DNA of 64,000 nucleotides, taken from contig OZ320321.1 in NCBI GenBank assembly GCA_976226885.1, forward strand, positions 57,908,001 through 57,972,000. The letters are read 5' to 3'. The translations under genes and the position numbers were made by a program. This stretch comes from Iphione sp. A-MEVVRFRX5 (lineage: Eukaryota). The notes under the pieces are model-generated. The model saw only the letters and a program-made list of their open reading frames with translations, did not search any database and was not told the origin of the DNA. This document shows, piece after piece, positions 30,251 to 63,740 of the stretch (position 1 is the first letter of the stretch; each line of letters starts with the position of its first letter).

Positions 30251-30280
30251 TTTTTTTTTTTTTTTTTTTATATCTTTATT
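30251..30280 (-). terminator. Polyadenylation signal and retrotransposed poly(A) tail of the LINE
   Basis: The minus strand reads AATAAAGATAT followed by 19 A (plus strand T19 ATATCTTTATT). Confidence 0.9.
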
Positions 30281-30761
30281 CACCTGATGGGTTATACATT
30301 GCGTACATTTTGTCAGGTCTCTGTCATAGTTATGTTCACATTACAGTTATATATACACTGGATGGTAGGATATAATACAGTCTATTTCAGGGTGGTTTGA
30401 TGTGGTTTCTTTACTGTTCTACTATTGGAGTGTGGCAGTTTTCCAGGGATCAGACAGCCGCCCAAAGTCCCCTGATGCTGCTGACTGGATAATTCTGACG
30501 GTGCATGGACATTAGCCCTTTGCCCCACTTGTCAGCTACGTATTTATCGTACCTTATCTTAGCTACTCAGATTTGAGGTATGTGGTATGTATTGTGTTGT
30601 GTTGTGTGAAGGCGAGTGAGGTGATTTTCCATGTATTATTGTTGCTCATTTCCTAGTGATAGACAGTAGCCCAATCACCTGCAGCCTGCATGGTACCGTT
30701 GTGATGGACAATAGCCCAGTCACTTTAGCATCCTGCGTTGGTCTTCTCGAGTCAATTCCTC

Positions 30762-33560
30762 TCATGATGTGTACATCATTAGCCTGATCTTCTGTTTGAA
30801 TTTGCTCTTTGGTAGTTCTACAGTTGTTTTTGGTAGGTCGTTCCATAGTTTAGAGCCTTTATATTTCACACTCCTCTTGTAGCTTTCAAGATTTGGTCTG
30901 TCCATGACAAATTTAGGTGCCTCGTCTGCTCTGGTTCTGATGTTTCCTCTGGCCGTGGTCTCACCAGCCATGTGCCAATGGTGCATTAACATGAGTATCC
31001 TCATATTCCTACGTGCGTCAAGGGTGGGAACTCTGCAAAGCTTCCGAGCAAGTGAGCTTCTCAGCAATTGGGAGAACGGAGACCGTGCGATCCTGTTGTA
31101 CATTCTGCATACTCGTTGATAGTTAACAGAGCGGTCATCGGTTAACAGGAAGAGGCCATACTCCAGGATCGGTAGTATGGTAGTCTTTATCAGTAGGATG
31201 CGATCACTTTGGGTGAGGATACTTCTGATTTTTCTGAAATAGTACAATTTGCTGCTAGCTTTTGCAATCGTTTTGTCTACTTGTGTATCAAGGCTTAGGC
31301 AACTATCCAAGTGGACACCCAGGTAGTTGTAGCTGTGTACATTTTCTAGCTTGTGGCCATTATATTCCAGTTCTGGTTGGTTTCTTGGTTTGTACCTATA
31401 CCTATACCACATTGCTTTTGTCTTGTTTTTGTTGATACATATTTTGTTTTCTTTTGTCCATTTGGATATTGAGTCGATGTCATCCTGCGCTTTATTTCTA
31501 GTTTCTTCGCTGTCTTCTGCTGCGGTGGTGATTACCATGTCGTCGGCATATAGTAAGGTTTTGCTGTATCTACACACCTTAGATATAGGATCAATAAAGA
31601 TAACAAACAGTAGGGGTCCCAGCAGTGAGCCCTGCGGGACACCACACTTGATGGTTGCCTTTTCTGATAGCACTCCGTTGGCAATAGTACGCTGGGTCCG
31701 GCCTGAGAGATAGTCTTTGAACCATAGAAGCTTGTCTACAATACCGAGGTCATGTAGTCTCTGTAGTATCGCTGCATGGCTGATGCTATCGAATGCCTTC
31801 CGGAAATCGAAATACACACTCACCACCTTGTTATGCTTGTTTAGGGCTGTGTGTACATTGTCTGTTAGTCTGCTGATTGCCAGGTCTGTCGACAGCCCCT
31901 TACGGAAGCCAAATTGGTTGCTGCTTAGTAGTTTCGCGTCTTCAAGGTATTTTGAGAGCCGTGTGTGAACGAGCCTTTCCAGTACCTTCCCCGGCATTGG
32001 AAGAATGCTAATAGGACGATAGTTACTGACATCTGCTTTTGGTCCACCTTTGTGTATCGGTGTCACAGTTGCACTTTTCCAGTCAGTGGGGATTTTATTG
32101 CTGTGCAGCGAGTCATTGATGATGTTTAGGAACTGTGGCATCACATGGTATAGTAGTGTTTTCAGGTGCCGCGTGGGGATAGCCGTGTAGCCAGATGGTT
32201 TCGTATCTTTCTGTGACTTAATGGTCTTGTACAGTTCCCAACTGGTTACTGGAGTCATGTTGAACTTGTTCTCAATGTTGCCGTATGCTGGCTTGAAGTC
32301 CCCTAGTTCGCTCGCAATAGTATCCCCTATGCCAGTGAAGAATCTATTTATGTAGCTCGCTGTATCATTCTTCTGAACTTCCTCATTATTGTTGACCAGG
32401 TTAATCTGCTCCTTCGAGTTCTTACCTAACCCTAGGTAATTCCTCATTTCTTGCCAGAACTTCGCTGGACAGCTTCGATGTTCTTCTAACTGGGTCCTTA
32501 TGTATGTACGCTTCCTATGGTGTATCGCCCGACGTGTCGCAGTTCGTAATGCTTTTGCTTCATCCCATATTTTGGCATCCTTCGTCCTGCTTGCTTCTCT
32601 GAATTTCCTATTGCGCTGCTTGATTAGGCGTTTAATGTTATTGTTTATCCAGGGTGCATCCCGTTGGTCGTTAGACCTATGTTCTCGCATGGGACATACC
32701 GTGGTTACGATCAGCATTAATATTTGTAGCAACAGCTCCCATTTTGCATTGACATCTTTTTGTGCCCAGAACTCGGTCCAGTCTGTACTTTGGATGCTGG
32801 TCCGGATCTTGTTGCTGGTTAGATTCTTCCACATCCTCTTTCTACAGTTTGTTCGTTGTGTTTCTGTTTTCCTGGGATGTTCTGTCAATAGACGGAGTTC
32901 GATGATGTGGTGGTCAGACATGGAATCCTCTATCACCTTGGCATGTTCTGGGTGCGCATTGTTTGTTATGATCAGGTCAATGGTGCTTCTGGTATTTAAT
33001 GTTACCCTCGTTGGTGATCTGATTAGCTGTTTCAGGCCATTACCTTGTAGCCAGTCTTGTAGATCACGTGATTGGGTGCTGATTTTCGCCATGTCAGCGT
33101 TCATGTCTCCCAATATGTGAATTGTTTTGTTGACTCCGATTACCCTTAGGTCGTTTTCAAGTTTATTTGTACATGTCTGTATGCTTCCTGTTGGTGGTCT
33201 GTAGACTCCACAAAGGTAGAGTTTCTGCCCCACCCCAACTCTGACTTCTAGCCAGAGTTTCTCTATGTCTCGGTTGCATTCACTAAGGTCCCATAATGGA
33301 TTTGTATTGTACCTATTGTCACATTTGGTATAGATTAGGATACCTCCTCCTCTTGATTTACAGCCATTACCGACTGGCCTGTCTTGCCGCGCTAGGGTAT
33401 AGCCAGTGATATTAACAGCGGCATCTGGGACTGCGCTTGTGAGCCAGGTTTCTGAGAGAATTAGGAAGTCAGGCTTACGCTTATCGATCAAAAGCCTTAC
33501 TTCATCAATTTTGGGTAGTAGGCTGCGGATATTCAAGTGCATGATCTTGGTATTATTCAT
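30762..33560 (-). CDS. LINE ORF2p: apurinic/apyrimidinic-like endonuclease + reverse transcriptase (932 aa)
   Basis: APE motifs HLNIRSL, LSETWL, RGGGILIY, GVYRPP, LGDMNAD, PTR..STIDLI and SDH. RT motifs WKSATVTPIHK, NYRPISILP, QFGFRKGLST, DFRKAFD, GVPQGSLLGPLLF, YADD and YLGVHLD. C-terminal GSKLWNDLP is typical of the CR1/L2 group. There is an in-frame TAG 21 codons upstream of the ATG. Confidence 0.97.
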   Translation of the reverse strand: MNNTKIMHLNIRSLLPKIDEVRLLIDKRKPDFLILSETWLTSAVPDAAVNITGYTLARQDRPVGNGCKSRGGGILIYTKCDNRYNTNPLWDLSECNRDIEKLWLEVRVGVGQKLYLCGVYRPPTGSIQTCTNKLENDLRVIGVNKTIHILGDMNADMAKISTQSRDLQDWLQGNGLKQLIRSPTRVTLNTRSTIDLIITNNAHPEHAKVIEDSMSDHHIIELRLLTEHPRKTETQRTNCRKRMWKNLTSNKIRTSIQSTDWTEFWAQKDVNAKWELLLQILMLIVTTVCPMREHRSNDQRDAPWINNNIKRLIKQRNRKFREASRTKDAKIWDEAKALRTATRRAIHHRKRTYIRTQLEEHRSCPAKFWQEMRNYLGLGKNSKEQINLVNNNEEVQKNDTASYINRFFTGIGDTIASELGDFKPAYGNIENKFNMTPVTSWELYKTIKSQKDTKPSGYTAIPTRHLKTLLYHVMPQFLNIINDSLHSNKIPTDWKSATVTPIHKGGPKADVSNYRPISILPMPGKVLERLVHTRLSKYLEDAKLLSSNQFGFRKGLSTDLAISRLTDNVHTALNKHNKVVSVYFDFRKAFDSISHAAILQRLHDLGIVDKLLWFKDYLSGRTQRTIANGVLSEKATIKCGVPQGSLLGPLLFVIFIDPISKVCRYSKTLLYADDMVITTAAEDSEETRNKAQDDIDSISKWTKENKICINKNKTKAMWYRYRYKPRNQPELEYNGHKLENVHSYNYLGVHLDSCLSLDTQVDKTIAKASSKLYYFRKIRSILTQSDRILLIKTTILPILEYGLFLLTDDRSVNYQRVCRMYNRIARSPFSQLLRSSLARKLCRVPTLDARRNMRILMLMHHWHMAGETTARGNIRTRADEAPKFVMDRPNLESYKRSVKYKGSKLWNDLPKTTVELPKSKFKQKIRLMMYTS

Positions 33561-34333
33561 GGCTCTAGTTCCACTGAGTGCACTTTCGGGGGTCGGAGTG
33601 CTAGTCGAGGTGTCGTTGAGCTAGGCTGTGGATGGCAGTATATTTACAGTGGTATGTACAATCAGTGTGTGATGAGGATGCAATTATTCACAAATGTATG
33701 AGTCAAATAGACAATGTACAATGTGTCGGTGAGATCAAGTTCCGTTCAGCGAAACACTTATGGGTGTGTGTTTTGCGGTCACTGATAGTGACTTTGATGG
33801 CGTATATACAGTTTGATTTTTGTACGGGGTGCGGTTACTTTTACATTTCGTACTGTCATACCCATATAGAGGCAGTTTGGACGGTATTATTAAACGATTG
33901 AATATTGGTGACGAACGGATAGTGTGGCGATGTGGTTGTGTAATAACATGACAGTCTTACAACGTTAGTAAAAAATGTGGCGATATCATGCAAATTCAAC
34001 TTGGGAACTTAGAAAAGACTACCTTGACAAATATTTGGTCACGATTTCATCTTATCAGTATAGGCAATTACTGAGTATCGCATGAAAGTCACACTTATCT
34101 TTATTCACGTTACCGGTCTCACGGCCCCTCTTGGATCGACGGTCAGCACAGAGGTTTTAGGTAATCACTCACAGATGGCATGCATCACAGCCAGTCAGCC
34201 AGACATTACGCCCAGGCCCACCGGGTGTGCTACGTTATATCCACTTTGTTGTAGTGCTGTCTTACTAGTGCATTGCTGGACAACCGCCCAAGCACTGCCA
34301 TGACAGCCGATCCGTAATGTACACCTGATGAAT

Positions 34334-34999
34334 CTAGTGATCGGGAATGTCCTGAACGCGTTTTGCCAGCCAGTCGCCTATCTTCTCCCCGAGCTCGATC
34401 GTCTCTTGCCTTCCGAGGTGGATCCCGTCATACAGCTTTCCATATCGGTAGCGGGCCTTTCCCTTATGCTTCGAGTAGATGAGCCTGGAGCACCAGATGT
34501 TACCCTCTCCATTACTGGCATTTTGCACGGTGATGATGTAATTCAGCTCACGGACAAGTTTTTCGACGAGTGTTTGACAGTCCCGGTATCGCGATGCCTC
34601 TTTTTCTATTCCGTTGAGCCAAAAGTTATATTTCAGGAGATGCATACTGAAGACCGTGGCAAACACTATTCGCGTTGCTGGGTACAGCGCGTGCAGTTTC
34701 TGGTATATACCTGTTACTTTCTTCTCCAGCTCCCGCCGTCCTATTCTCACAGATGTATAGCGCGGTATAACCCATCGCTTCCCATCCTGCTTGACCAGTC
34801 TTGTTATGTTGTTAATTCCGGCCATTACCACTAGGAAGTGGGGGTGTGGGTGGAATCGATGTTTACTCACGTGAGTGTACAGTGATTTGAAGTTTCCGCC
34901 TGGTATAAACGTTACACGGCCTGGTAGACCTAAGGTATTCAAAGCATTCTGTAGGTGCCGACCGCGACTGTCAGTTAAATACACGATGTCGCCCTCCAT
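34334..34999 (-). CDS. Stand-alone SGNH/GDSL-type hydrolase (esterase-like) ORF inside the LINE (221 aa from ATG 34999)
   Basis: All four SGNH blocks are present in order: IVYLTDSRGR (Ser), TFIPGG (Gly), VVMAGINNIT (Asn) and LYDGIHL (Asp/His). The ATG lies 13 nt after the ORF1 stop. Confidence 0.85.
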   Translation of the reverse strand: MEGDIVYLTDSRGRHLQNALNTLGLPGRVTFIPGGNFKSLYTHVSKHRFHPHPHFLVVMAGINNITRLVKQDGKRWVIPRYTSVRIGRRELEKKVTGIYQKLHALYPATRIVFATVFSMHLLKYNFWLNGIEKEASRYRDCQTLVEKLVRELNYIITVQNASNGEGNIWCSRLIYSKHKGKARYRYGKLYDGIHLGRQETIELGEKIGDWLAKRVQDIPDH

Positions 35000-35012: not shown

Positions 35013-36773
35013 TTATACAATCTTGGAAAGTTCCCGTAGCTCTGCTCGAGTTAGTTCTAGGACCTGTCCTGATGTGTTCATACCTTCGTATGACCTCTCT
35101 TTGATCTGGGTTGAGTGCAAAGAGGCACCAGCGCCCCAGTAAGTGTCATTCGAAGCTTCGACAAGCGTTCGTTCACCTGTATCGAGTAGCGCCTCGCCTG
35201 CAATCGGGTTTTGTGTAAACTTATGTAACGAGAGTTCTTCCATTATTGCCTGCTGTTTTTGTTTCCATTGTTTTGAGTCCTTGACCTTCTTCTGCAGTCT
35301 TCGTACACCCAGGGTTGTTTGGCAGTCCCTAATCGCCTCCGCTATTTCGTTCTCCCCTGAGTCGACTGCTCTAGCCCATTGATAGGCTTGTTCCGTGCAG
35401 TTGAATGTGTTTTCTCTCCAACGGAGGTTGCATTTATATAGGCTGGACAGTGTGTGGTCTTCTCCGGAGTAAAATAAGTATTCATCATCCTTGATTTCCC
35501 TCGTTCTTTCTAGCGACAGTTCCCTCGGAAGATCGCATAGTCTGTCATGTTTATATATACGGTCTTCAATTTGAATAGCATCTCCTTTCATCTGGACCTT
35601 TAGATCATGCTCCTTCGCCAGTCTTGCTACGGCTCTCAGGTTCGATTGTCTCTTGCGTTCTTCGGCGGTCTGGTCATGGTTGATCCAAATGTTGCCTGTG
35701 CCCCTCACGTCTTTAAGTTTTCCTTTCTTCTGCATCAGCTCATCCTTTTTTTCATTATCTTTGAATGATAGGAAAACTCCAGGTGTTCCATTGGGGTCTT
35801 TCCTTCCACTTCGTCTGCACTCCGCTAGATCCGACTTCCTTAGCCGAACACCTATTTTCCCCGTCAGGTCTATCACTTTTTGCTTCAGATCCTCGCCATC
35901 GGTGTGCTGTATTCCATCGATATATACATTCTTTCGTCTGCTTTGCCGATGCAGGGAATCAACGCTTCTCTTCAGGTTGGCAATAATTTCTGATTGAGGT
36001 TTGTCCGTTCCTTTGCCATGTATCATCGCCCTCAGCTTTGCGTTATCATCTTCTAGTGCCTTTACTTTTGCCTCCAGTGACTCCACTTTACTCCGAGTGT
36101 CCGCGGCCGATTCCTTCATATTCTTCCTGTCCTGATCCGCTGCGGTTACTTGTTTTTCTAGCGTTTTGACTTTCTTGTCTATACTCTGGCGAGTTTTTTC
36201 CCCTTGGGCAAGGACAGTTTGTAATATATCCTCAAGCGTTAATGGTGCGTCCTTTTCTTTCTTCTGCACTGGGTCCTTTTGAACTCTCTTTATCTCATCT
36301 TCTGTTCCCGGACTGTTCGCCTTTCTTTTCTTCGCCTCCGATCGCCCTCGATTTGCCGGTATTTTGAGTGATTCATCGTCTGTGACATATTCATCGTCGT
36401 CATCTGGTCTTTCATCATAGGTGTCCATTTCTTCGTCTCCTGTTAGGTCTGTCTCATCGTTGTCACACACACTAGGGTCATCTGCGCTCACAGAATAATC
36501 GTTCGTTGTGTCTTGGTTCGCCTTTTTTCTGATTAACGCGAGTCCCTCTGCCAGGCTTACCGGTGTAGCTTTAATTACATTTGTCAACGTAATTGAGGCA
36601 TCAGTCGGAAGAGAATGACGCCGCCCTCCTTGAAGGCGTTGTTTACTAGGTTGTTGGGTTAAGGTTTGTTTACTTTTGCCCGAAGCGTCGGTGGGCCGCC
36701 CCGACCGTTGTGACCTAGATGCCCCGGTTTGAATGGGGTCGTGCAGCTCCCTACCTGTACAGGCCTGCGACAT
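35013..36773 (-). CDS. LINE ORF1p: acidic/basic N-terminus + coiled coil + L1-type RRM/CTD + C-terminal NADAR (YbiA-like) domain (586 aa from ATG 36773)
   Basis: Heptad-rich segment (LEKQV...KVESLEAKVKALEDDNAKL) leads into SRRKNVYIDGI..GEDL, ECRRSG, VFLSF and IWINHDQT, the L1 ORF1/Transposase_22-like pattern. From 35483 the NADAR motifs follow: FYSG..LSSL, FNCTEQAYQ, KFTQNP, LLDTG..LVEASNDTYWGAG and GMNTSGQVL..TRAEL. Confidence 0.92.
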   Translation of the reverse strand: MSQACTGRELHDPIQTGASRSQRSGRPTDASGKSKQTLTQQPSKQRLQGGRRHSLPTDASITLTNVIKATPVSLAEGLALIRKKANQDTTNDYSVSADDPSVCDNDETDLTGDEEMDTYDERPDDDDEYVTDDESLKIPANRGRSEAKKRKANSPGTEDEIKRVQKDPVQKKEKDAPLTLEDILQTVLAQGEKTRQSIDKKVKTLEKQVTAADQDRKNMKESAADTRSKVESLEAKVKALEDDNAKLRAMIHGKGTDKPQSEIIANLKRSVDSLHRQSRRKNVYIDGIQHTDGEDLKQKVIDLTGKIGVRLRKSDLAECRRSGRKDPNGTPGVFLSFKDNEKKDELMQKKGKLKDVRGTGNIWINHDQTAEERKRQSNLRAVARLAKEHDLKVQMKGDAIQIEDRIYKHDRLCDLPRELSLERTREIKDDEYLFYSGEDHTLSSLYKCNLRWRENTFNCTEQAYQWARAVDSGENEIAEAIRDCQTTLGVRRLQKKVKDSKQWKQKQQAIMEELSLHKFTQNPIAGEALLDTGERTLVEASNDTYWGAGASLHSTQIKERSYEGMNTSGQVLELTRAELRELSKIV

Positions 36774-39700
36774 GTTACACACTGGTGATCGCTACTTTAC
36801 TTTTGGATTTACAGTCTCACCTTGTCGTTTTGTGTGTTATTATGCCGCTGTGGACGTTCCAGGTACAGTCACTGTGTCGTCGGTATCCTTGCTTTTGATG
36901 TTGGCCTCCTTTATTCCTTAGTTTTGGTTAGTGCTCATCGCTCCCGCTCCCCATGCATGTCTGCTCGCTACGCCATCATAAATGAAATACGTATTCCCAT
37001 GTACTCGTGAGAAACTCGTCAAATAAGCCCCGGTGCTAAACGAGCAAAGTTATTTCTTTATGCGAAGTAACTTGATATAATAACTATACTTATTTACAAG
37101 ATGAACTCTTTATATACCGTAAAAGGACTAGATTGTAAAGTCTTCTGTGTAGCATCCTTCTCCTGGGAGAATGTCGGCACGCAATACGCTTGAGTCAATG
37201 GACTAGTTGTTTGCCGCCATACTGAAGACTTCGACACCCTGCGGGTTAAAACCTTATTAAATCTAATTCAGGAGATATTAATCTGTAGCCTGAATCTTAC
37301 ACAAAACACTTCAGCACGCAAGCCGCCTCAGTATCCTCTTCAAGTGTAGTTCTCATGTATTAACATGATACGTCGTTTCCGAAAGCATGTATCTAAATGG
37401 TGGATTTTGTTTTAAAGATGTATTACTTGCCGTATCATCCAGAATAATCGACATCTTACGCATCAAATTTGAGTGGATAACATCAAAGTAATTTTAATTA
37501 GCAACACGACCATGACAAAAGCTGTGTAATTAACTATTCATTTCTATATTCACCAACGACAGGAAAAGGCAAAGGAAAGCAAGGAGGCCTTGGGTTGTAG
37601 CGATGTGGACTATTAAGAAGCGGTGGGGGTGGAGGCAAGCGCTCGGTACGGCAGGCGGTTAGACAAGCACTGCCGCCTCGACAATTAGGCCTGTCACTCG
37701 TCACCTGTTATCATCTTCATTGTGGACAGCCGCGAGTGGCAGGCCTTCTCCATCATGCCAGCAGGCATCGCACATACCGACACACGTTCTCACACGCGCG
37801 AATTGAACACTTGGAGCTTGCCGACGACGGATGCTCGCTCGCTCGTCGAACCAGAACACGCAGCCTTTTAGGCATTGATATTCACATATGCATAGGTTTT
37901 CACCCACTTTTATCGTTTGTACTAAAGCCCGACAATGTCGTAGAGGGGAATATTCCCCGTTTCTCCCTGCGCGTCAATCAATAACGACCATTTTCGGTAC
38001 ACAACTCCAGACAGTAAAATGATTCTGATGATAAAGGGTTAGGGGAGAGAAGGACGGAGCGTTCACAAAAGATACAAGACAGTAACACGGAGAAGGTGAT
38101 ATTGAGAAAGTAAAAGGCACAGCAATAACGAGAGAACAGCCATTAAGAGAAACTCAGACGACATCTGATAGAGGTGGCAAGATGAACGAAAAGAGATCTA
38201 CAGGCCCTAGAAAGACAGAAAAGGTAATTCTATAATAGTGGATAAGCATGGCAGATTGAGTGGAACGGTTTCGACATCATGCGACAAGGCATGCAGAGAA
38301 GAAAGCTGTACAGCTCTTTTCCAAAGGACGACCCTGCATATTGTATATCAGCAGTGCGATAAGTGGCTTCTGGAAATTATGACGTTATGGGCAGAATTCT
38401 GTGCGGGCATTTTGTATACAGGCATACAAGTGAGTGAGCTATGGAACACAGGAAATGCGGCTTAAGATCCCAAGCCATTATCCCTGTAGCCCCACTATTG
38501 CACGTGTGCATGTCTGCGTAAATTAGGATGGAAACAGACTACCAGGCCGGTACTACCGTATTGCACGTCCTTGCGCAATTCCGCAAGAAGGCCTTGAAGG
38601 TGGATTTAATGTGTGTAAGTATTAACTGTATTTGGGAGACCGTTGTCGAACCAGCCCATCGACTGGGAAGATACAATGGAGGGGCAGGTGCCCGAGCCTA
38701 ATGTATGGGGCCAGTCATTGGGGCGTCTTTACTGAATAGTCTGTCGATACAATCTCGCTAAAAACAAATGCCTTTTTCAGTCGGTGGCAATTTAATTGTT
38801 GCCATCAGATTAGGCAGCCCGGCAATTCCTCCATACTACATGGTCTTAAGACAGTCATTTAATGTCTTGTTTCCTGGTCGTTTCTGGTACTTAAGAAGGG
38901 ACCTGTTGATGTAGATAATATTTTTGTCGCCAAAAGTGTGTTTGCCAATGAAACTTCCAGCCTCAATAGGAAAGCACGTAAATGACCTCTGAATTCAATT
39001 CCGGTGCGTTTTTATATGGCCTTTGTGAATGCTACAACCATGGTGGTTATAACCGTGTGATCGTAACGTTTAGCAATGAGAAATCCTGTGGAAACATGTG
39101 GCAGTCTGTAGCAAAGATTCACTTCTTATAAAAGAAATAACAGTAAATATCCCAGCAAACAGCAAAGACTATCTCAACTCGCACTTTAAACACAAGTTCA
39201 ACTTCAAGGGAAATGGAAATATGGCTTTCAATTTCTAGATTAACTCTCCAGATAATCTCTCTAATCACTCTATCTTAATCAGAAGTATTGCATTCATTGG
39301 GGGGGTCACAAGAACTCGCGAACTAGAAGAGTAGGAATCGCAAGAGGAAAGAGTTGCAAGGCAGAGCAAAGACCATTATTATCATTTTCATGCAGTGTAG
39401 CCCCAGTTTGAGACAGATCATAGCGAGATCAAATGAGGAGAGGGACAAATATTTCTAAGACCAAATATTCCATTCCCCATGATATAGAAAAGATCAAAAG
39501 AGACCAAATCATGGAAAAGCCACGGTCCTCTACACGGGTCTCAACTGCATCCATGTTATATCAGCCCATTTATTAAAAGTTATATTTTATGTACATAACC
39601 TTGGACATATCAGTCAAAGATGAAATACATGTATTCCTATATGCTTAGAGTGAGAATAAAACAATGTAAAGTATGAAACATTCCCTCCGAACTCTACTTT

Positions 39701-40379: not shown

Positions 40380-40520
40380 NNNNNNNNNNNNNNNNNNNNN
40401 NNNNNNNNNNNNNNNNNNNNNNNNNNNNNNNNNNNNNNNNNNNNNNNNNNNNNNNNNNNNNNNNNNNNNNNNNNNNNNNNNNNNNNNNNNNNNNNNNNNN
40501 NNNNNNNNNNNNNNNNNNNN
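40380..40520. other. Assembly gap (141 N)
   Basis: A run of N inside the candidate exon 2, flanked by a low-complexity (GGT)-rich tract. Confidence 1.
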
Positions 40521-59900: not shown

Positions 59901-60029
59901 TCGAGTTTGTTTATTGTTAGCAAATCGTCATTATGATTTCGACAGTCCACCTATATTCAAAAGTATAGATACAAAAGACTGTAAGTTGAAATTTAATTGC
60001 ATTTCAAAGACTCTAGTCTGAGGTATTAT

Positions 60030-61160
60030 TGTGAGGCAAAAAGAGTCAACGGCAAGTGGCGTGAAGAATTGTACGACAAAAATTCTTTAAGAATGTCTGC
60101 TGTGTCATTTAGAACAATTCACCCATATGCTGAATTGTTGTCTTGGCATGTGCAAAGTGCCACAAGCGTGGAAATCATCATGCATCACACCCTTGTATAA
60201 AGGCACAGTCAGTCGTTTCGAGGCAAATTCTTATTGTCCAGTTAGTATCCTGCCCCTATGCAGTAAAATTATGGAAAGAATCTTTGCTACCCAATGTGCT
60301 ACATTTATCGAAAATGGTAAATTACTATCATCTCGGCAATACGGATTCAGGAAAAATAAATCCACAATTGATGCCTTAAACCATGTACTGCATTACATAC
60401 TAATATAAATGAGGGTATAGCAGCAGGGGCCATATTTTTTGAATATCAAAAGGCCTTTGATAGTGTACAGCAGGATGTATTTTTTCTAAATAAGAAGAAA
60501 ATGGGATTTAGTAATAGTGTCAGATGGTTTGAATCGTACTTAAATAACAGAACAATTGCTACAAAGCTCTCTAGGATTATACCTGACACTCGTCTACTAG
60601 ATATTGCTGTGCCACAGGAAGTATCCATGAGCTGTTTAGTCTCTTCATCAATGACAGTATCAAAACACTCAAATATTGTCATAGCATTATGTATGCAGGC
60701 AACACTATCATTTTGGCTTCAAGCAGATCAATACTGGAAATACAACAGGCATTAACAGTTGATATAATCAGTCTGAACCAATGGTGCAAAGCTAATGGCA
60801 TACAGATAAATTACAAAAAAAACTGAAACGATGCTGTTTTGTAATGCGAGAAAGAACAACAAGGGTAGCTGTTTACAATAGATGGAAAGGAACCAGCTCA
60901 AGTGAATAGATATAAATACCTGGGAATGATACTAGGTTCTGGACTTACAATAAAATTAGACCTGGATAGTAAGGTTACTAAATTATATGCAATTATGATA
61001 TGGTATGACATACAGTCTGAATCAGCTGTAATACAGGTCTTGAAACTTATTTTATCCCGATAATTGAATATGGAATAGGGTCCCTTCACTGTTGTAACTC
61101 CCCTAACTTCAAGAAATTAAACAGATAACTAGAAAAGGTGGTACGACTAGCAACAGGCAA
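60030..61160 (+). pseudogene. Decayed LINE ORF2 (RT) fragment, CR1/L2 group
   Basis: VPQAWKSSCITPLYKG, SYCPVSILPLCSKIMER, RQYGFRKNKSTIDAL, YQKAFDSV, WFESYLNNRT and AVPQ, interrupted by stops and frameshifts. Confidence 0.88.
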
Positions 61161-62869: not shown

Positions 62870-63110
62870 AATTATCTGAGCAATAGAATACGGTATTGCC
62901 TCGTCAATGCAGCTGGTTCTGACCTAAACAATATAAATATTGGGTTGTCGCAGGGATCAACACTTGGTCCCCTACTCTTTTCCATGTTCATCAATCATTT
63001 GGCTAGTTCAATAGAAGCTACCACCAGTTTTATTTGCGGATGACACGTATATTCTAGCCAGCAACTATGATAAGTCACAGCTAGCTGTTGAAACTCAAAA
63101 CATTGTGCAC
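62870..63110 (+). pseudogene. LINE RT fragment (core domains 4-5)
   Basis: NYLSNR...IGLSQGSTLGPLLFSMFINHL, then a frameshift to LFADDT. Confidence 0.85.
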
Positions 63111-63254
63111 GTCTGTAATTGACAACAACAACTATTATATTCTACATGTATGTACTACTGTACCATTCTTACCTATACATCCGGGTCTAATTTTGGATTA
63201 AATAAATTATCTCTAATCTCATCTTTTAAGCGCTTCTGTATTGAAACATAGATT

Positions 63255-63740
63255 GCAGATTTGCTTACCCAGATTCACCGATTTGCTAGATGCTACGTTA
63301 CATGAAGGGGTCTTCCCAACAGCATGGAAGAAGGCGGTTGTGGTTCCGTTACATAAGAAGGGGTCATGTCTGGACAGAGCTGACTACAGACGGGTGTGAT
63401 TGTTACCAAGGCTAGTCAAGTTGCTAGAGAAGGCCGTATTGCACCAGTTGTCAGAATTTGTCAGAGAAACCGGGTTACTAACGGATTCTAAATACGGTTT
63501 TCCTAAAGGCATGGGTAATTCAACAATGTATGCTGCAGTTGTAAAGGAAGATTTGGAGTTGCTGAATGGTGGTAGGTATGTGGCCTCAGCGTTCTTGGAC
63601 TTGTCTAAATCCTTGGACTTAGTCAATCATGAGCTATTGCTATCAAAAGTATGGAACTTTGGCTCTAGGGGAGTGGTATGGCGTTGACTGAACTCATATC
63701 TCAGTTCCACAATACAACGAGTATCATGTAAGGGGAAAAT
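63255..63740 (+). pseudogene. LINE RT fragment (N-terminal RT domains)
   Basis: GVFPTAWKKAVVVPLHKKG, DYRRV*LLPRLVKLLEK, SKYGFPKG, FLDLSKSLDLVNHELLL and *LNSYLS. Confidence 0.88.

What the first reader, a model, noticed from the sequence alone, without database searches (positions are those of the whole stretch)
35013..35483. NADAR (YbiA-like) domain fused to the ORF1 RNP protein of an intact LINE
Seen in sequence: the last ~155 aa of ORF1, in frame and right after the RRM/CTD, carry the NADAR signature in order: FYS, F..TEQAYQ (YbiA SEHYFQ), KFTQN, LLDT, LVEAS-ND-TYWG (YbiA LVEHTENDAYWG) and G.N..G..L...R..L. One deviation is LSSL where FSNF is usual. Established knowledge: NADAR enzymes include E. 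coli YbiA (an N-glycosidase for riboflavin-pathway intermediates) and DarT1 antitoxin-type hydrolases that remove ADP-ribose from guanine. Guanine-modifying ADP-ribosyltransferases also exist in animals (pierisin, clam CARP-1). The accessory domains I associate with CR1/L2 ORF1 are PHD, esterase and zinc knuckles, not NADAR. Inference: the element may package a de-ADP-ribosylase with its RNA/cDNA to undo host nucleic-acid ADP-ribosylation, analogous to viral macrodomains. I cannot confirm that this architecture is undescribed.
Basis: partly seen in the sequence, partly recalled or inferred. Interest (0 to 1): 0.92.

Follow-up and report, generated by a model that had tools for sequence, protein, structure and literature searches.

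The report
LINE ORF1 protein carrying NADAR hydrolase
An apparently intact jumping gene (a LINE retrotransposon) has an RNA-packaging protein that ends in a well-preserved NADAR enzyme domain, of a type known to strip ADP-ribose from DNA and RNA bases; the fusion is real, old and widespread, but it has already been noted briefly in oyster LINEs and its function is untested.

Summary
The last ~160 aa of the minus-strand ORF1 (36773..35013) form a full-length NADAR domain: Pfam PF08719 E 2.6e-27, TIGR02464 above cutoff, AlphaFold pLDDT 97, best PDB fold matches Phytophthora NADAR+ADP-ribose (TM 0.82) and E. coli YbiA. The rest of ORF1 models as an L1-type coiled coil, RRM and CTD. A separate SGNH-like ORF follows, then an APE-RT ORF2, AATAAA and a poly(A) tail, and all ORFs are open.

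The active-site residues defined by mutagenesis are present (E464, R471 for Lys, E542, D546, W549). They are kept in at least 62 of 67 (W549: 57 of 67) ORF1-NADAR clusters from public data. Three distant elements from other assemblies have an ORF1-NADAR gene upstream of a collinear ORF2, two of them with the SGNH ORF between. The domain is therefore an old, selected module and not a one-off capture.

The novelty is limited. A 2025 Genome Biology paper already reports YbiA-family NADAR domains in ORF1 proteins of Crassostrea gigas LINEs in Repbase, and this scan flagged the same fusion in other windows of this genome.

The proposed function is removal of ADP-ribose from G or C bases on the element's RNA or cDNA, as counter-defence. 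It is plausible but purely inferred. Interest is moderate.

The parts
35013..36773 (-). ORF1 (586 aa from ATG 36773; open from GTG 36782), stop TAA at 35015-35013
36249..36773 (-). ORF1 N-terminal low-complexity, predicted disordered region (aa 1-175, ATG numbering)
   Evidence: pLDDT below 50
36018..36236 (-). ORF1 long helix, presumed coiled coil (aa 180-252)
   Evidence: aligned to the L1 ORF1p trimer
35514..35939 (-). ORF1 RRM (aa 279-367, beta-alpha-beta-beta-alpha-beta) plus CTD (aa 368-420)
   Evidence: secondary structure; Foldseek 2ykp/2yko/2ldy and many RRMs. No Pfam Transposase_22 hit at sequence level
35016..35498 (-). NADAR (YbiA-type) domain, the finding itself. Key residues in GTG numbering: E464, R471, R494, W506, K521, E542, D546, W549
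34334..34999 (-). Separate SGNH/GDSL-like hydrolase ORF (221 aa from ATG 34999). It lies in another frame, 13 nt after the ORF1 stop, and keeps the DSR...G...G...DGxH motifs
   Evidence: (Lipase_GDSL_2 E 3.8e-4, below the gathering score)
33561..34333 (-). 773-nt spacer with no ORF of 80 aa or more on the element's strand (longest 47 aa)
30762..33560 (-). ORF2, 932 aa, APE endonuclease plus reverse transcriptase (YADD present)
30251..30761 (-). 3' UTR with AATAAA (30280-30275) and a 19-nt poly(A) tail (30269-30251)

Best explanation
Shown: this is a three-cistron, poly(A)-tailed non-LTR retrotransposon. Its ORF1 protein is an L1-type nucleic-acid chaperone (disordered N-terminus, coiled coil, RRM, CTD) with a complete, catalytically equipped YbiA-type NADAR domain at its C-terminus. 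The fusion is an ancient module of a large LINE lineage and is under selection.

Inferred mechanism: ORF1p binds the element's own RNA in cis as a multimer, so the RNP is coated with many tethered NADAR active sites. NADAR enzymes of all four families hydrolyse the N-glycosidic bond between ADP-ribose and guanine, and some also cytosine, in ssDNA and RNA (PMC11543638, PMC12945103). The tethered domain would therefore clear ADP-ribosylated bases from the RNA template, the nascent cDNA or the nicked target DNA. Such adducts would otherwise block reverse transcription.

The likely source of the adducts is host or microbial pierisin/CARP-1-type ADP-ribosyltransferases. Their eukaryotic CARP-1 branch is reported to be concentrated in bivalves (PMC12945103). 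On this reading the domain is a counter-defence, comparable to the orphan NADAR that T4-like phages use against DarT1 (PMC11257639). My confidence that the domain is a real, selected NADAR module of ORF1p is about 0.95. The confidence given below (0.4) is for the nucleic-acid de-ADP-ribosylation mechanism.
For: Domain identity.

Active site, mapped through the 8bau alignment onto the residues defined in PMC11543638: E43->E464, K50->R471 (a Lys-to-Arg mutant is active in vitro), K75->R494, W89->W506, E125->E542, D130->D546, W133->W549.

Selection. Among 67 ORF1-fused clusters (each below 50% identity to the others), E464 is kept in 66/67, K/R471 in 62/67, E542 in 63/67, D/N546 in 65/67, and W506, K521, G567, G572 and R579 in at least 66/67. 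NADAR is the best conserved segment of ORF1p: mean pairwise identity 33%, against 28% for RRM and CTD and 13.5% for the coiled coil.

Age and breadth. About half of the 150 best NADAR representatives in 1.84 billion proteins also carry the ORF1 coiled-coil/RRM part. L001, L002 and L004, from other assemblies, have ORF1-NADAR upstream of a full-length collinear ORF2 that is 29-32% identical to the window's.

RNP context: the ORF1 model matches the human L1 ORF1p trimer.

Independent precedents for selfish elements carrying NADAR: annelid and bivalve picornaviruses and other viruses (PMC9503650), phages, and Ectocarpus Gypsy Pol.
Against: There is no biochemical or genetic data for any retrotransposon NADAR. 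No ADP-ribosyltransferase was looked for or found in this genome; the scan notes contain none. I do not know the host species.

Lys50 is Arg in this copy, and the K95R mutant of E. coli C7 NADAR failed to rescue DarT1 toxicity in vivo.

The conserved residues would serve any ADP-ribose or ribosyl N-glycosidase activity equally well, so they do not select the nucleic-acid substrate.

The comparison set was chosen by NADAR similarity, which inflates the relative conservation seen. No close copies were available, so no dN/dS could be computed.
Confidence: 0.4

Rival explanations
1. The NADAR domain hydrolyses soluble ADP-ribose derivatives rather than modified nucleic acid. Candidates are cyclic-ADPR-type immune signals made by host TIR or other NADase defence proteins, or ADPr by-products of RNA processing. 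It would thereby mute a host alarm around the RNP.
For: Iyer et al. (PMC9503650) propose this preference for viral NADAR domains. The conserved residues contact ADP-ribose itself and not the base or the nucleic acid. The domain is the compact YbiA-like core. The G. lovleyi DarG1 NADAR, which carries the N-terminal extension proposed to bind DNA, matches the model poorly (TM 0.46).
Against: Tethering to an RNA-binding chaperone is more easily explained by a macromolecular substrate held in cis. YbiA-type NADARs without extensions do act on G- and C-ADPr oligonucleotides.
Confidence: 0.2
2. The domain has an RNA-processing or metabolic role unrelated to conflict. It might remove an NAD-derived cap or end modification from the LINE transcript, or act as a YbiA-like N-glycosidase on riboflavin-pathway intermediates.
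For: The TIGR02464 equivalog-domain model of the riboflavin-intermediate N-glycosidase scores above its cutoff. PMC12477816 suggests processing of the RNA intermediate.
Against: A metabolite-salvage activity gives no obvious benefit to a retrotransposon. It also would not explain repeated NADAR capture by viruses, phages, LTR elements and LINEs. The TIGR model is a domain-level match and is not evidence of substrate.
Confidence: 0.12
3. The domain is a non-catalytic passenger or a purely structural or binding module, for example an ADP-ribose reader or a multimerisation surface. It could also be a neutral relic.
For: This copy has conservative substitutions at two Lys positions (R471, R494) and the LSSL variant.
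Against: Both catalytic Glu residues and the ND.YWG and G.N..G motifs are kept in nearly all of the 67 deeply diverged fused clusters. NADAR is the most conserved part of ORF1p. The same gene order persists at 29-32% ORF2 identity.
Confidence: 0.08
4. The fusion is an artefact: a host NADAR exon read through by chance, or a misassembly specific to this copy.
For: Only one copy is present in this window.
Against: The ORF is continuous. The same collinear architecture appears in dozens of independent clusters and in three fetched loci from other assemblies. The scan notes report further copies in this genome (unchecked).
Confidence: 0.01

Closest known systems
ORF1 proteins of Crassostrea gigas LINE families in Repbase (labelled Tx1) with YbiA-family NADAR domains, noted in Genome Biol 2025 (PMC12477816)
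   Same: The same kind of fusion: a LINE ORF1p plus a YbiA-type NADAR in a lophotrochozoan. The function is unknown there too, and the authors suggest RNA-intermediate processing.
   Different: I could not obtain those sequences, so identity of lineage is untested. The present ORF2 is about 930 aa and has only two Cys residues in its last ~120 aa, so no C-terminal Cys-rich motif. It has no detectable match to L1 ORF2p in PDB. It is also accompanied by a separate SGNH ORF. These features fit the Jockey/CR1 supergroup better than Tx1/L1 (partly my own knowledge). The paper gives one sentence, with no catalytic-site, distribution or synteny analysis.
Phytophthora nicotianae NADAR (PDB 8bau) and E. 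coli YbiA (PDB 2b3w)
   Same: Same fold (TM 0.82 and 0.77). Same catalytic Glu/Lys(Arg)/Glu/Asp/Trp constellation. YbiA-type Glu in the LVE motif.
   Different: Those are stand-alone enzymes with 21-23% identity. Here the domain is the C-terminal module of an RNA-binding retrotransposon protein.
DarG1 NADAR antitoxins and orphan NADARs of T4-like phages (PMC11543638, PMC11257639)
   Same: A NADAR used to reverse base ADP-ribosylation; in phages, carried by a mobile element as counter-defence (abstract). This is the functional analogy proposed here.
   Different: No DarT partner. Glu rather than the DarG1-specific Asp at the E125/D171 position. Poor fold match to the G. lovleyi DarG1 NADAR (TM 0.46). 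Eukaryotic retroelement context.
Human LINE-1 ORF1p (PDB 2ykp/2yko), a Type II ORF1p
   Same: Coiled coil, RRM and CTD architecture (TM 0.70 by target, E 1.6e-7).
   Different: 15-18% identity and no Pfam Transposase_22 hit. It also has an extra 160-aa enzyme domain after the CTD.
Esterase-bearing (Type IV) ORF1p of CR1/L2 elements, e.g. ZfL2-1 (PMC3905857, PMC4120745)
   Same: A precedent for a hydrolase being part of the LINE ORF1 module. An SGNH-like hydrolase is also encoded here.
   Different: Here the SGNH hydrolase is a separate cistron, and the enzyme fused to ORF1p is NADAR. The 2014 survey of ORF1 domains in the Jockey superfamily lists no NADAR.
NADAR at the N-terminus of Pol in an Ectocarpus Gypsy lineage (PMC12477816), and NADAR in annelid/bivalve picornaviruses and nidoviruses (PMC9503650)
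   Same: Independent capture of NADAR by retroelements and RNA viruses, including viruses of the same animal groups.
   Different: Different element classes and different fusion partners.

Membership tests
NADAR superfamily, YbiA-type (Pfam PF08719 / TIGR02464) | Profile match above the curated threshold over the whole domain | tested here: met
   PF08719: 96.5 bits against GA 35.1, model positions 9-163 of 163. TIGR02464: 93.3 bits against 73.7.
NADAR superfamily, YbiA-type (Pfam PF08719 / TIGR02464) | Alpha-helical core flanked by two small beta-sheets (YbiA-like fold) | tested here: met
   The AF2 model has pLDDT 97.2 and shows strands 5-14 and 29-36, a helical core and strand 115-118. Foldseek finds 8bau TM 0.82 and 2b3w TM 0.77, with no other significant fold. 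This is a prediction, not a solved structure.
NADAR superfamily, YbiA-type (Pfam PF08719 / TIGR02464) | Catalytic residues: Glu (E43 of PnNADAR), Lys (K50), and the YbiA-subfamily Glu (E125), plus D130 and W133 | tested here: met
   E464, R471 (conservative Lys-to-Arg), E542, D546 and W549, by the alignment and the residue roles. They are conserved in 57-66 of 67 fused clusters.
NADAR superfamily, YbiA-type (Pfam PF08719 / TIGR02464) | N-glycosidase or ADP-ribosyl-base hydrolase activity | not testable with these tools
   This requires an enzyme assay.
DarG1-type NADAR antitoxin | Genetic linkage to a DarT1 toxin; catalytic Asp at the D171 position; N-terminal beta-beta-alpha extension | tested here: not met
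   There is no DarT and the context is eukaryotic. Glu occupies that position. Foldseek against G. lovleyi NADAR 8bat gives TM 0.46, E 1.0.
Type II (L1-like) LINE ORF1p | Coiled coil followed by a single RRM and a CTD | tested here: met
   Model segments 180-252, 279-367 and 368-420. Foldseek against 2ykp gives TM 0.70 by target over ~195 columns. At sequence level Pfam Transposase_22 is not detected.
APE-type non-LTR retrotransposon (LINE) | ORF2 with an APE endonuclease and a reverse transcriptase; a 3' tail | tested here: met
   RVT_1 E 9e-41 and Exo_endo_phos_2 E 1e-10. AATAAA and A19.
APE-type non-LTR retrotransposon (LINE) | Target-site duplication and a defined 5' end | tested here: inconclusive
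   Only a 12-nt match with one mismatch was found, 2.7 kb upstream. That is no better than chance, and the flanks do not align. No second copy was available to define the 5' end.
Tx1 clade (the label given to the published C. gigas ORF1-NADAR LINEs) | ORF2 affinity to L1/Tx1 with a C-terminal Cys-rich motif | tested here: inconclusive
   No PDB L1 ORF2p match at E<=1e-3, only R2 reverse transcriptases. The last ~120 aa of ORF2 contain only two Cys residues. No reference RT set was available for a clade tree.

The most novel reading that the evidence does not exclude
ADP-ribosylation of nucleobases by CARP-1/pierisin-type transferases is an unrecognised animal defence against retroelements and RNA viruses in lophotrochozoans. 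On this reading a whole LINE lineage, along with viruses of annelids and bivalves and, per unchecked scan notes, a PolB-encoding element in this genome, has armed itself with NADAR erasers. That would be the first enzymatic counter-defence domain described in a LINE ORF1 protein.
Probability: 0.2. Interest if true: 0.85.

Novelty: new member of a known kind. Interest (0 to 1): 0.55.

Why it matters
LINE ORF1 proteins are generally viewed as non-enzymatic chaperones, with the CR1/L2 esterase as the one known exception. A second enzyme class fused to ORF1p, conserved in its catalytic residues and from a family whose only established macromolecular activity is erasing ADP-ribose from G and C bases, points to a possible layer of host-retrotransposon conflict that has not been studied in animals: nucleic-acid ADP-ribosylation.

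The idea is directly testable with existing reagents, namely DarT1- or ScARP-modified oligonucleotides and NADAR mutants. Even if the conflict idea fails, the family offers dozens of natural NADAR variants tethered to an RNA-binding scaffold.

The value is tempered in two ways. The fusion has already been mentioned in print, and it recurs many times in this genome.

Tried and rejected
1. The search for homologous proteins with ORF1 (region 430-589) found nothing. With the 59-sequence profile it found one hit. The word-indexed search was unproductive, and the exhaustive representative search was what worked.
2. An exact-sequence look-up of ORF1 found nothing.
3. tblastn of the three ORFs against the window found only this copy, plus two degraded RT fragments of other LINEs.
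4. The TSD search was inconclusive.
5. The NADAR tree of 149 domains has unresolved deep branches. The fused label is clustered (27 changes against 49 when shuffled) but does not form one clade. Single versus multiple capture, and the donor lineage, could not be decided.
6. I tested whether longer ORF1-NADAR proteins carry the SGNH domain in frame. There were no hits with phmmer or with a 4-sequence HMM, and Pfam shows nothing after NADAR.
7. I tried to assign the LINE clade from database names, the Atlas and PDB. No names were informative.
8. I rejected the idea that the SGNH ORF is a frameshifted tail of ORF1. It is a separate cistron with its own ATG in L001 and L004 as well, and has a homologue in L005.
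9. The supplements of PMC12477816 do not name the Repbase families in searchable text.
Full report
**What is in the sequence**

On the minus strand the window holds one complete-looking non-LTR retrotransposon, with these parts.
- ORF1 runs 36782..35013 (589 aa from GTG; the first ATG is at 36773, giving 586 aa).
- A 221-aa ORF follows 13 nt after the ORF1 TAA stop, in another frame (ATG 34999..34334).
- A 773-nt spacer comes next, with no ORF of 80 aa or more on that strand.
- ORF2 runs 33560..30762 (932 aa).
- A ~490-nt 3' UTR ends in AATAAA and a 19-nt poly(A) at 30269-30251.

ORF2 has APE and RT domains (RVT_1 E 9e-41) and the YADD box. These three ORFs, plus a 206-aa ORF antisense within ORF2, are the only ORFs longer than 200 aa in the whole 64 kb. 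No second copy lies in the window. I could not define the 5' end or a target-site duplication.

**Check of the observation**

- Pfam NADAR (PF08719) matches aa 441-583 over model positions 9-163 of 163, with E 2.6e-27 and 96.5 bits against a gathering score of 35.1.
- NCBIfam TIGR02464, the YbiA-type domain model, scores 93.3 bits against a cutoff of 73.7.
- phmmer against PDB finds only the Phytophthora nicotianae NADAR (8bau, E 3.8e-6) and E. coli YbiA (2b3w, E 2e-3).
- An AlphaFold2 model of the last 165 aa, built on an 82-sequence alignment, has mean pLDDT 97.2.
- Foldseek against PDB returns 8bau (TM 0.82, E 2.7e-9) and 2b3w (TM 0.77) as the only significant matches. The DarG1-type Geobacter NADAR matches poorly (TM 0.46).

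**The partner domains**

A model of the whole ORF1p was built on a 59-sequence alignment (pLDDT above 90 for 356 residues). It shows a disordered first ~175 aa, a 70-residue helix, a beta-alpha-beta-beta-alpha-beta RRM, a small CTD, and then NADAR. Foldseek matches the human LINE-1 ORF1p trimer (2ykp, TM 0.70 by target, E 1.6e-7) and many RRMs, besides 8bau. Pfam Transposase_22 is not detected by sequence.

**Active site**

Schuller et al. 2023 (PMC11543638) define the residues that bind ADP-ribose and are needed for guanine de-ADP-ribosylation. Using the 8bau alignment (chain numbering is paper numbering plus 2), they map as follows.

| PnNADAR residue | Window ORF1 residue |
|---|---|
| E43 | E464 |
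| K50 | R471 |
| K75 | R494 |
| W89 | W506 |
| E125 (the YbiA-subfamily Glu) | E542 |
| D130 | D546 |
| W133 | W549 |

Only the two Lys-to-Arg changes differ. The paper reports that the equivalent K95R mutant is active in vitro but does not rescue DarT1 toxicity in vivo. Arg at the first of these positions (K50/R471) is a common natural variant, at 18/67; at the second (K75/R494) it is rare, at 3/67 (see below).

**Is it selected, and is it a one-off?**

An exhaustive phmmer search of 1.84 billion cluster representatives with the domain gave 5,919 hits, with 696 at E<=1e-10 and none above 39% identity. Of the best 150, about half also match the coiled-coil, RRM and CTD part of this ORF1 (E down to 8e-23), with NADAR at or near the C-terminus.

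In the 67 such clusters with a full-length domain, conservation is as follows.

| Residue (GTG numbering) | Clusters keeping it |
|---|---|
| S446 | 67/67 |
| E464 | 66/67 |
| K/R471 | 62/67 |
| K/R494 | 62/67 |
| W506 | 66/67 |
| K521 | 67/67 |
| E542 | 63/67 |
| D/N546 | 65/67 |
| W549 | 57/67 |
| G567, G572 | 67/67 each |
| R579 | 66/67 |

Across the 59 aligned ORF1 proteins, NADAR is the best conserved segment. Mean pairwise identity is 33%, against 28% for RRM and CTD and 13.5% for the coiled coil. One caveat applies: the set was picked by NADAR similarity.

Three loci fetched from other assemblies show the same gene order.
- L001: ORF1-NADAR of 475 aa, a 212-aa GDSL-like ORF, and an ORF2 of 969 aa.
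- L002: ORF1-NADAR of 571 aa and an ORF2 of 940 aa.
- L004: ORF1-NADAR of 433-446 aa, a 211-aa SGNH-like ORF, an ORF2 of 960-976 aa, and AATAAA plus poly(A).

Their ORF2s are collinear with the window's over the full length at 29-32% identity. L004 ORF1 aligns from the coiled coil to the end of NADAR at 25% identity, E 3e-38. The small ORF keeps the SGNH catalytic motifs (DSR, G, G and DGxH) in all four elements compared, the window, L001, L004 and L005.

The ESM Atlas holds three ORF1-sized, all-NADAR eukaryotic clusters, labelled Annelida. AlphaFold DB clusters include gene models whose aligned part spans RRM, CTD and NADAR, for example K1R4Q0. To my own knowledge that accession series is from Crassostrea gigas; I did not verify this here.

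The fusion is thus an old, widespread and constrained module, and the window copy is a diverged but intact member. A tree of 149 NADAR domains could not resolve whether there was one capture or several, nor the donor.

**What is known already**

A full-text search found one paper linking NADAR domains to transposable elements. Genome Biol 2025 (PMC12477816) describes NADAR at the N-terminus of Pol in an Ectocarpus Gypsy lineage. [quoted passage not shown]

The 2014 survey of ORF1 domains in the Jockey superfamily lists no NADAR. Iyer et al. 2022 list NADAR in annelid/bivalve picornaviruses, nidoviruses, NCLDVs and phages, but not in retrotransposons.

This scan's notes also flag the same fusion in other windows of this genome, together with a PolB-NADAR fusion. 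These are unchecked first-reader notes.

**Which LINE clade?**

This is unresolved.
- The ORF2 is short (about 930 aa) and has only two Cys residues in its last ~120 aa.
- It shows no match to L1 ORF2p in PDB at E<=1e-3, only R2 reverse transcriptases.
- It is associated with an SGNH hydrolase, a domain so far described in CR1/L2 ORF1p (PMC3905857, PMC4120745).
- These features, with its C-terminal W-N-x-L-P...F-K motif (my own knowledge), suggest the Jockey/CR1 supergroup rather than Tx1/L1.
- Against that, the AATAAA and poly(A) tail, seen in both the window and L004, are atypical for CR1/L2.

Database names and the Atlas gave no help. Whether this is the same lineage as the published oyster 'Tx1' families could not be tested.

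**Mechanism**

The shown facts are a catalytically equipped NADAR covalently attached to an L1-type RNA-binding chaperone, and conservation across a deep LINE lineage.

Established knowledge is that members of all four NADAR families remove ADP-ribose from guanine in DNA and RNA, and that YbiA-type and some other NADARs also remove it from cytosine (PMC11543638; PMC12945103). T4-like phages use an orphan NADAR to defeat DarT1 (PMC11257639 abstract). [quoted passage not shown]

The inference is that ORF1p coats the LINE RNA in cis. The tethered NADAR then keeps the template, the cDNA or the target DNA free of ADP-ribosyl-base adducts that would stall reverse transcription. I put this at about 0.4.

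The rivals, with my estimates:
- Hydrolysis of soluble ADPr-derived signals or by-products, the preference Iyer et al. propose for viral NADARs: 0.2.
- RNA-end or NAD-cap processing, or a metabolic N-glycosidase role: 0.12.
- A non-catalytic or neutral passenger: 0.08, contradicted by the catalytic-site conservation.
- An artefact: 0.01, refuted by the related loci.

**Verdict**

The domain assignment and the fusion are correct. The functional idea is reasonable but untested. The novelty is limited by prior mention in the literature and by recurrence in this genome. I file it as a new member of a known kind, with moderate interest (0.55), mainly because it makes a specific and easily tested prediction about nucleic-acid ADP-ribosylation as a retroelement battleground.

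Noticed in passing
window 34334-34999 (-); L001 3091-3729; L004 4686-5321; L005 4272-4874: A stand-alone ~200-220-aa SGNH/GDSL-like hydrolase ORF lies between ORF1-NADAR and ORF2. Its catalytic-type motifs (DSR...G...G...DGxH) are kept in four elements that are only ~23% identical. In the window it starts 13 nt after the ORF1 stop, in another frame, so it is a separate cistron and not a frameshifted ORF1 tail. The Pfam hits are weak (E 4e-4 to 9e-4, below the gathering score).
   Followed up: partly
window 33561-34333 (-): A 773-nt stretch between the SGNH ORF and ORF2 has no ORF of 80 aa or more on the element's strand. A spacer of similar length (~630-680 nt) is present in L004. How ORF2 is translated from a three-cistron RNA is unexplained.
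   Followed up: no
window 60028-61146 (+) and 62870-63735 (+): Degraded reverse-transcriptase fragments of other LINEs, 26-41% identical to this ORF2 in pieces.
   Followed up: no
P0001 (2914 aa, L003 3282-12026, NCBI GCA_013332915.1), P0002 (1075 aa), P0003, P0004, P0007: Public proteins with 2-5 tandem NADAR domains. P0002 has five Pfam NADAR stretches totalling 442 bits. They are the top hits of the domain search and form their own clade in the tree. Their function and organism are unknown.
   Followed up: partly
L005 805-4269: In a sister element from the same assembly as L004, a Copia-type LTR retrotransposon polyprotein occupies the place where ORF1-NADAR should be. The SGNH ORF and ORF2 are retained, so this is a nested insertion or a replacement.
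   Followed up: no
AlphaFold DB clusters K1R4Q0 ('Enolase 4', 871 aa, residues 497-858) and K1QS99 ('Neuroligin-4', residues 196-359): Gene models with host-gene names contain an RRM-CTD-NADAR or NADAR segment that matches this ORF1p. These are probably gene predictions contaminated by transposable elements.
   Followed up: no
ESM Atlas structural neighbours (row 2): A 425-aa eukaryotic (Mollusca) cluster carrying Pfam Impact_N resembles an ORF1-NADAR cluster in overall predicted structure (TM 0.45-0.51). It may be another enzyme-like domain swapped onto a LINE ORF1 scaffold.
   Followed up: no
window 40380-40520: A 141-N assembly gap. It was left untouched.
   Followed up: no
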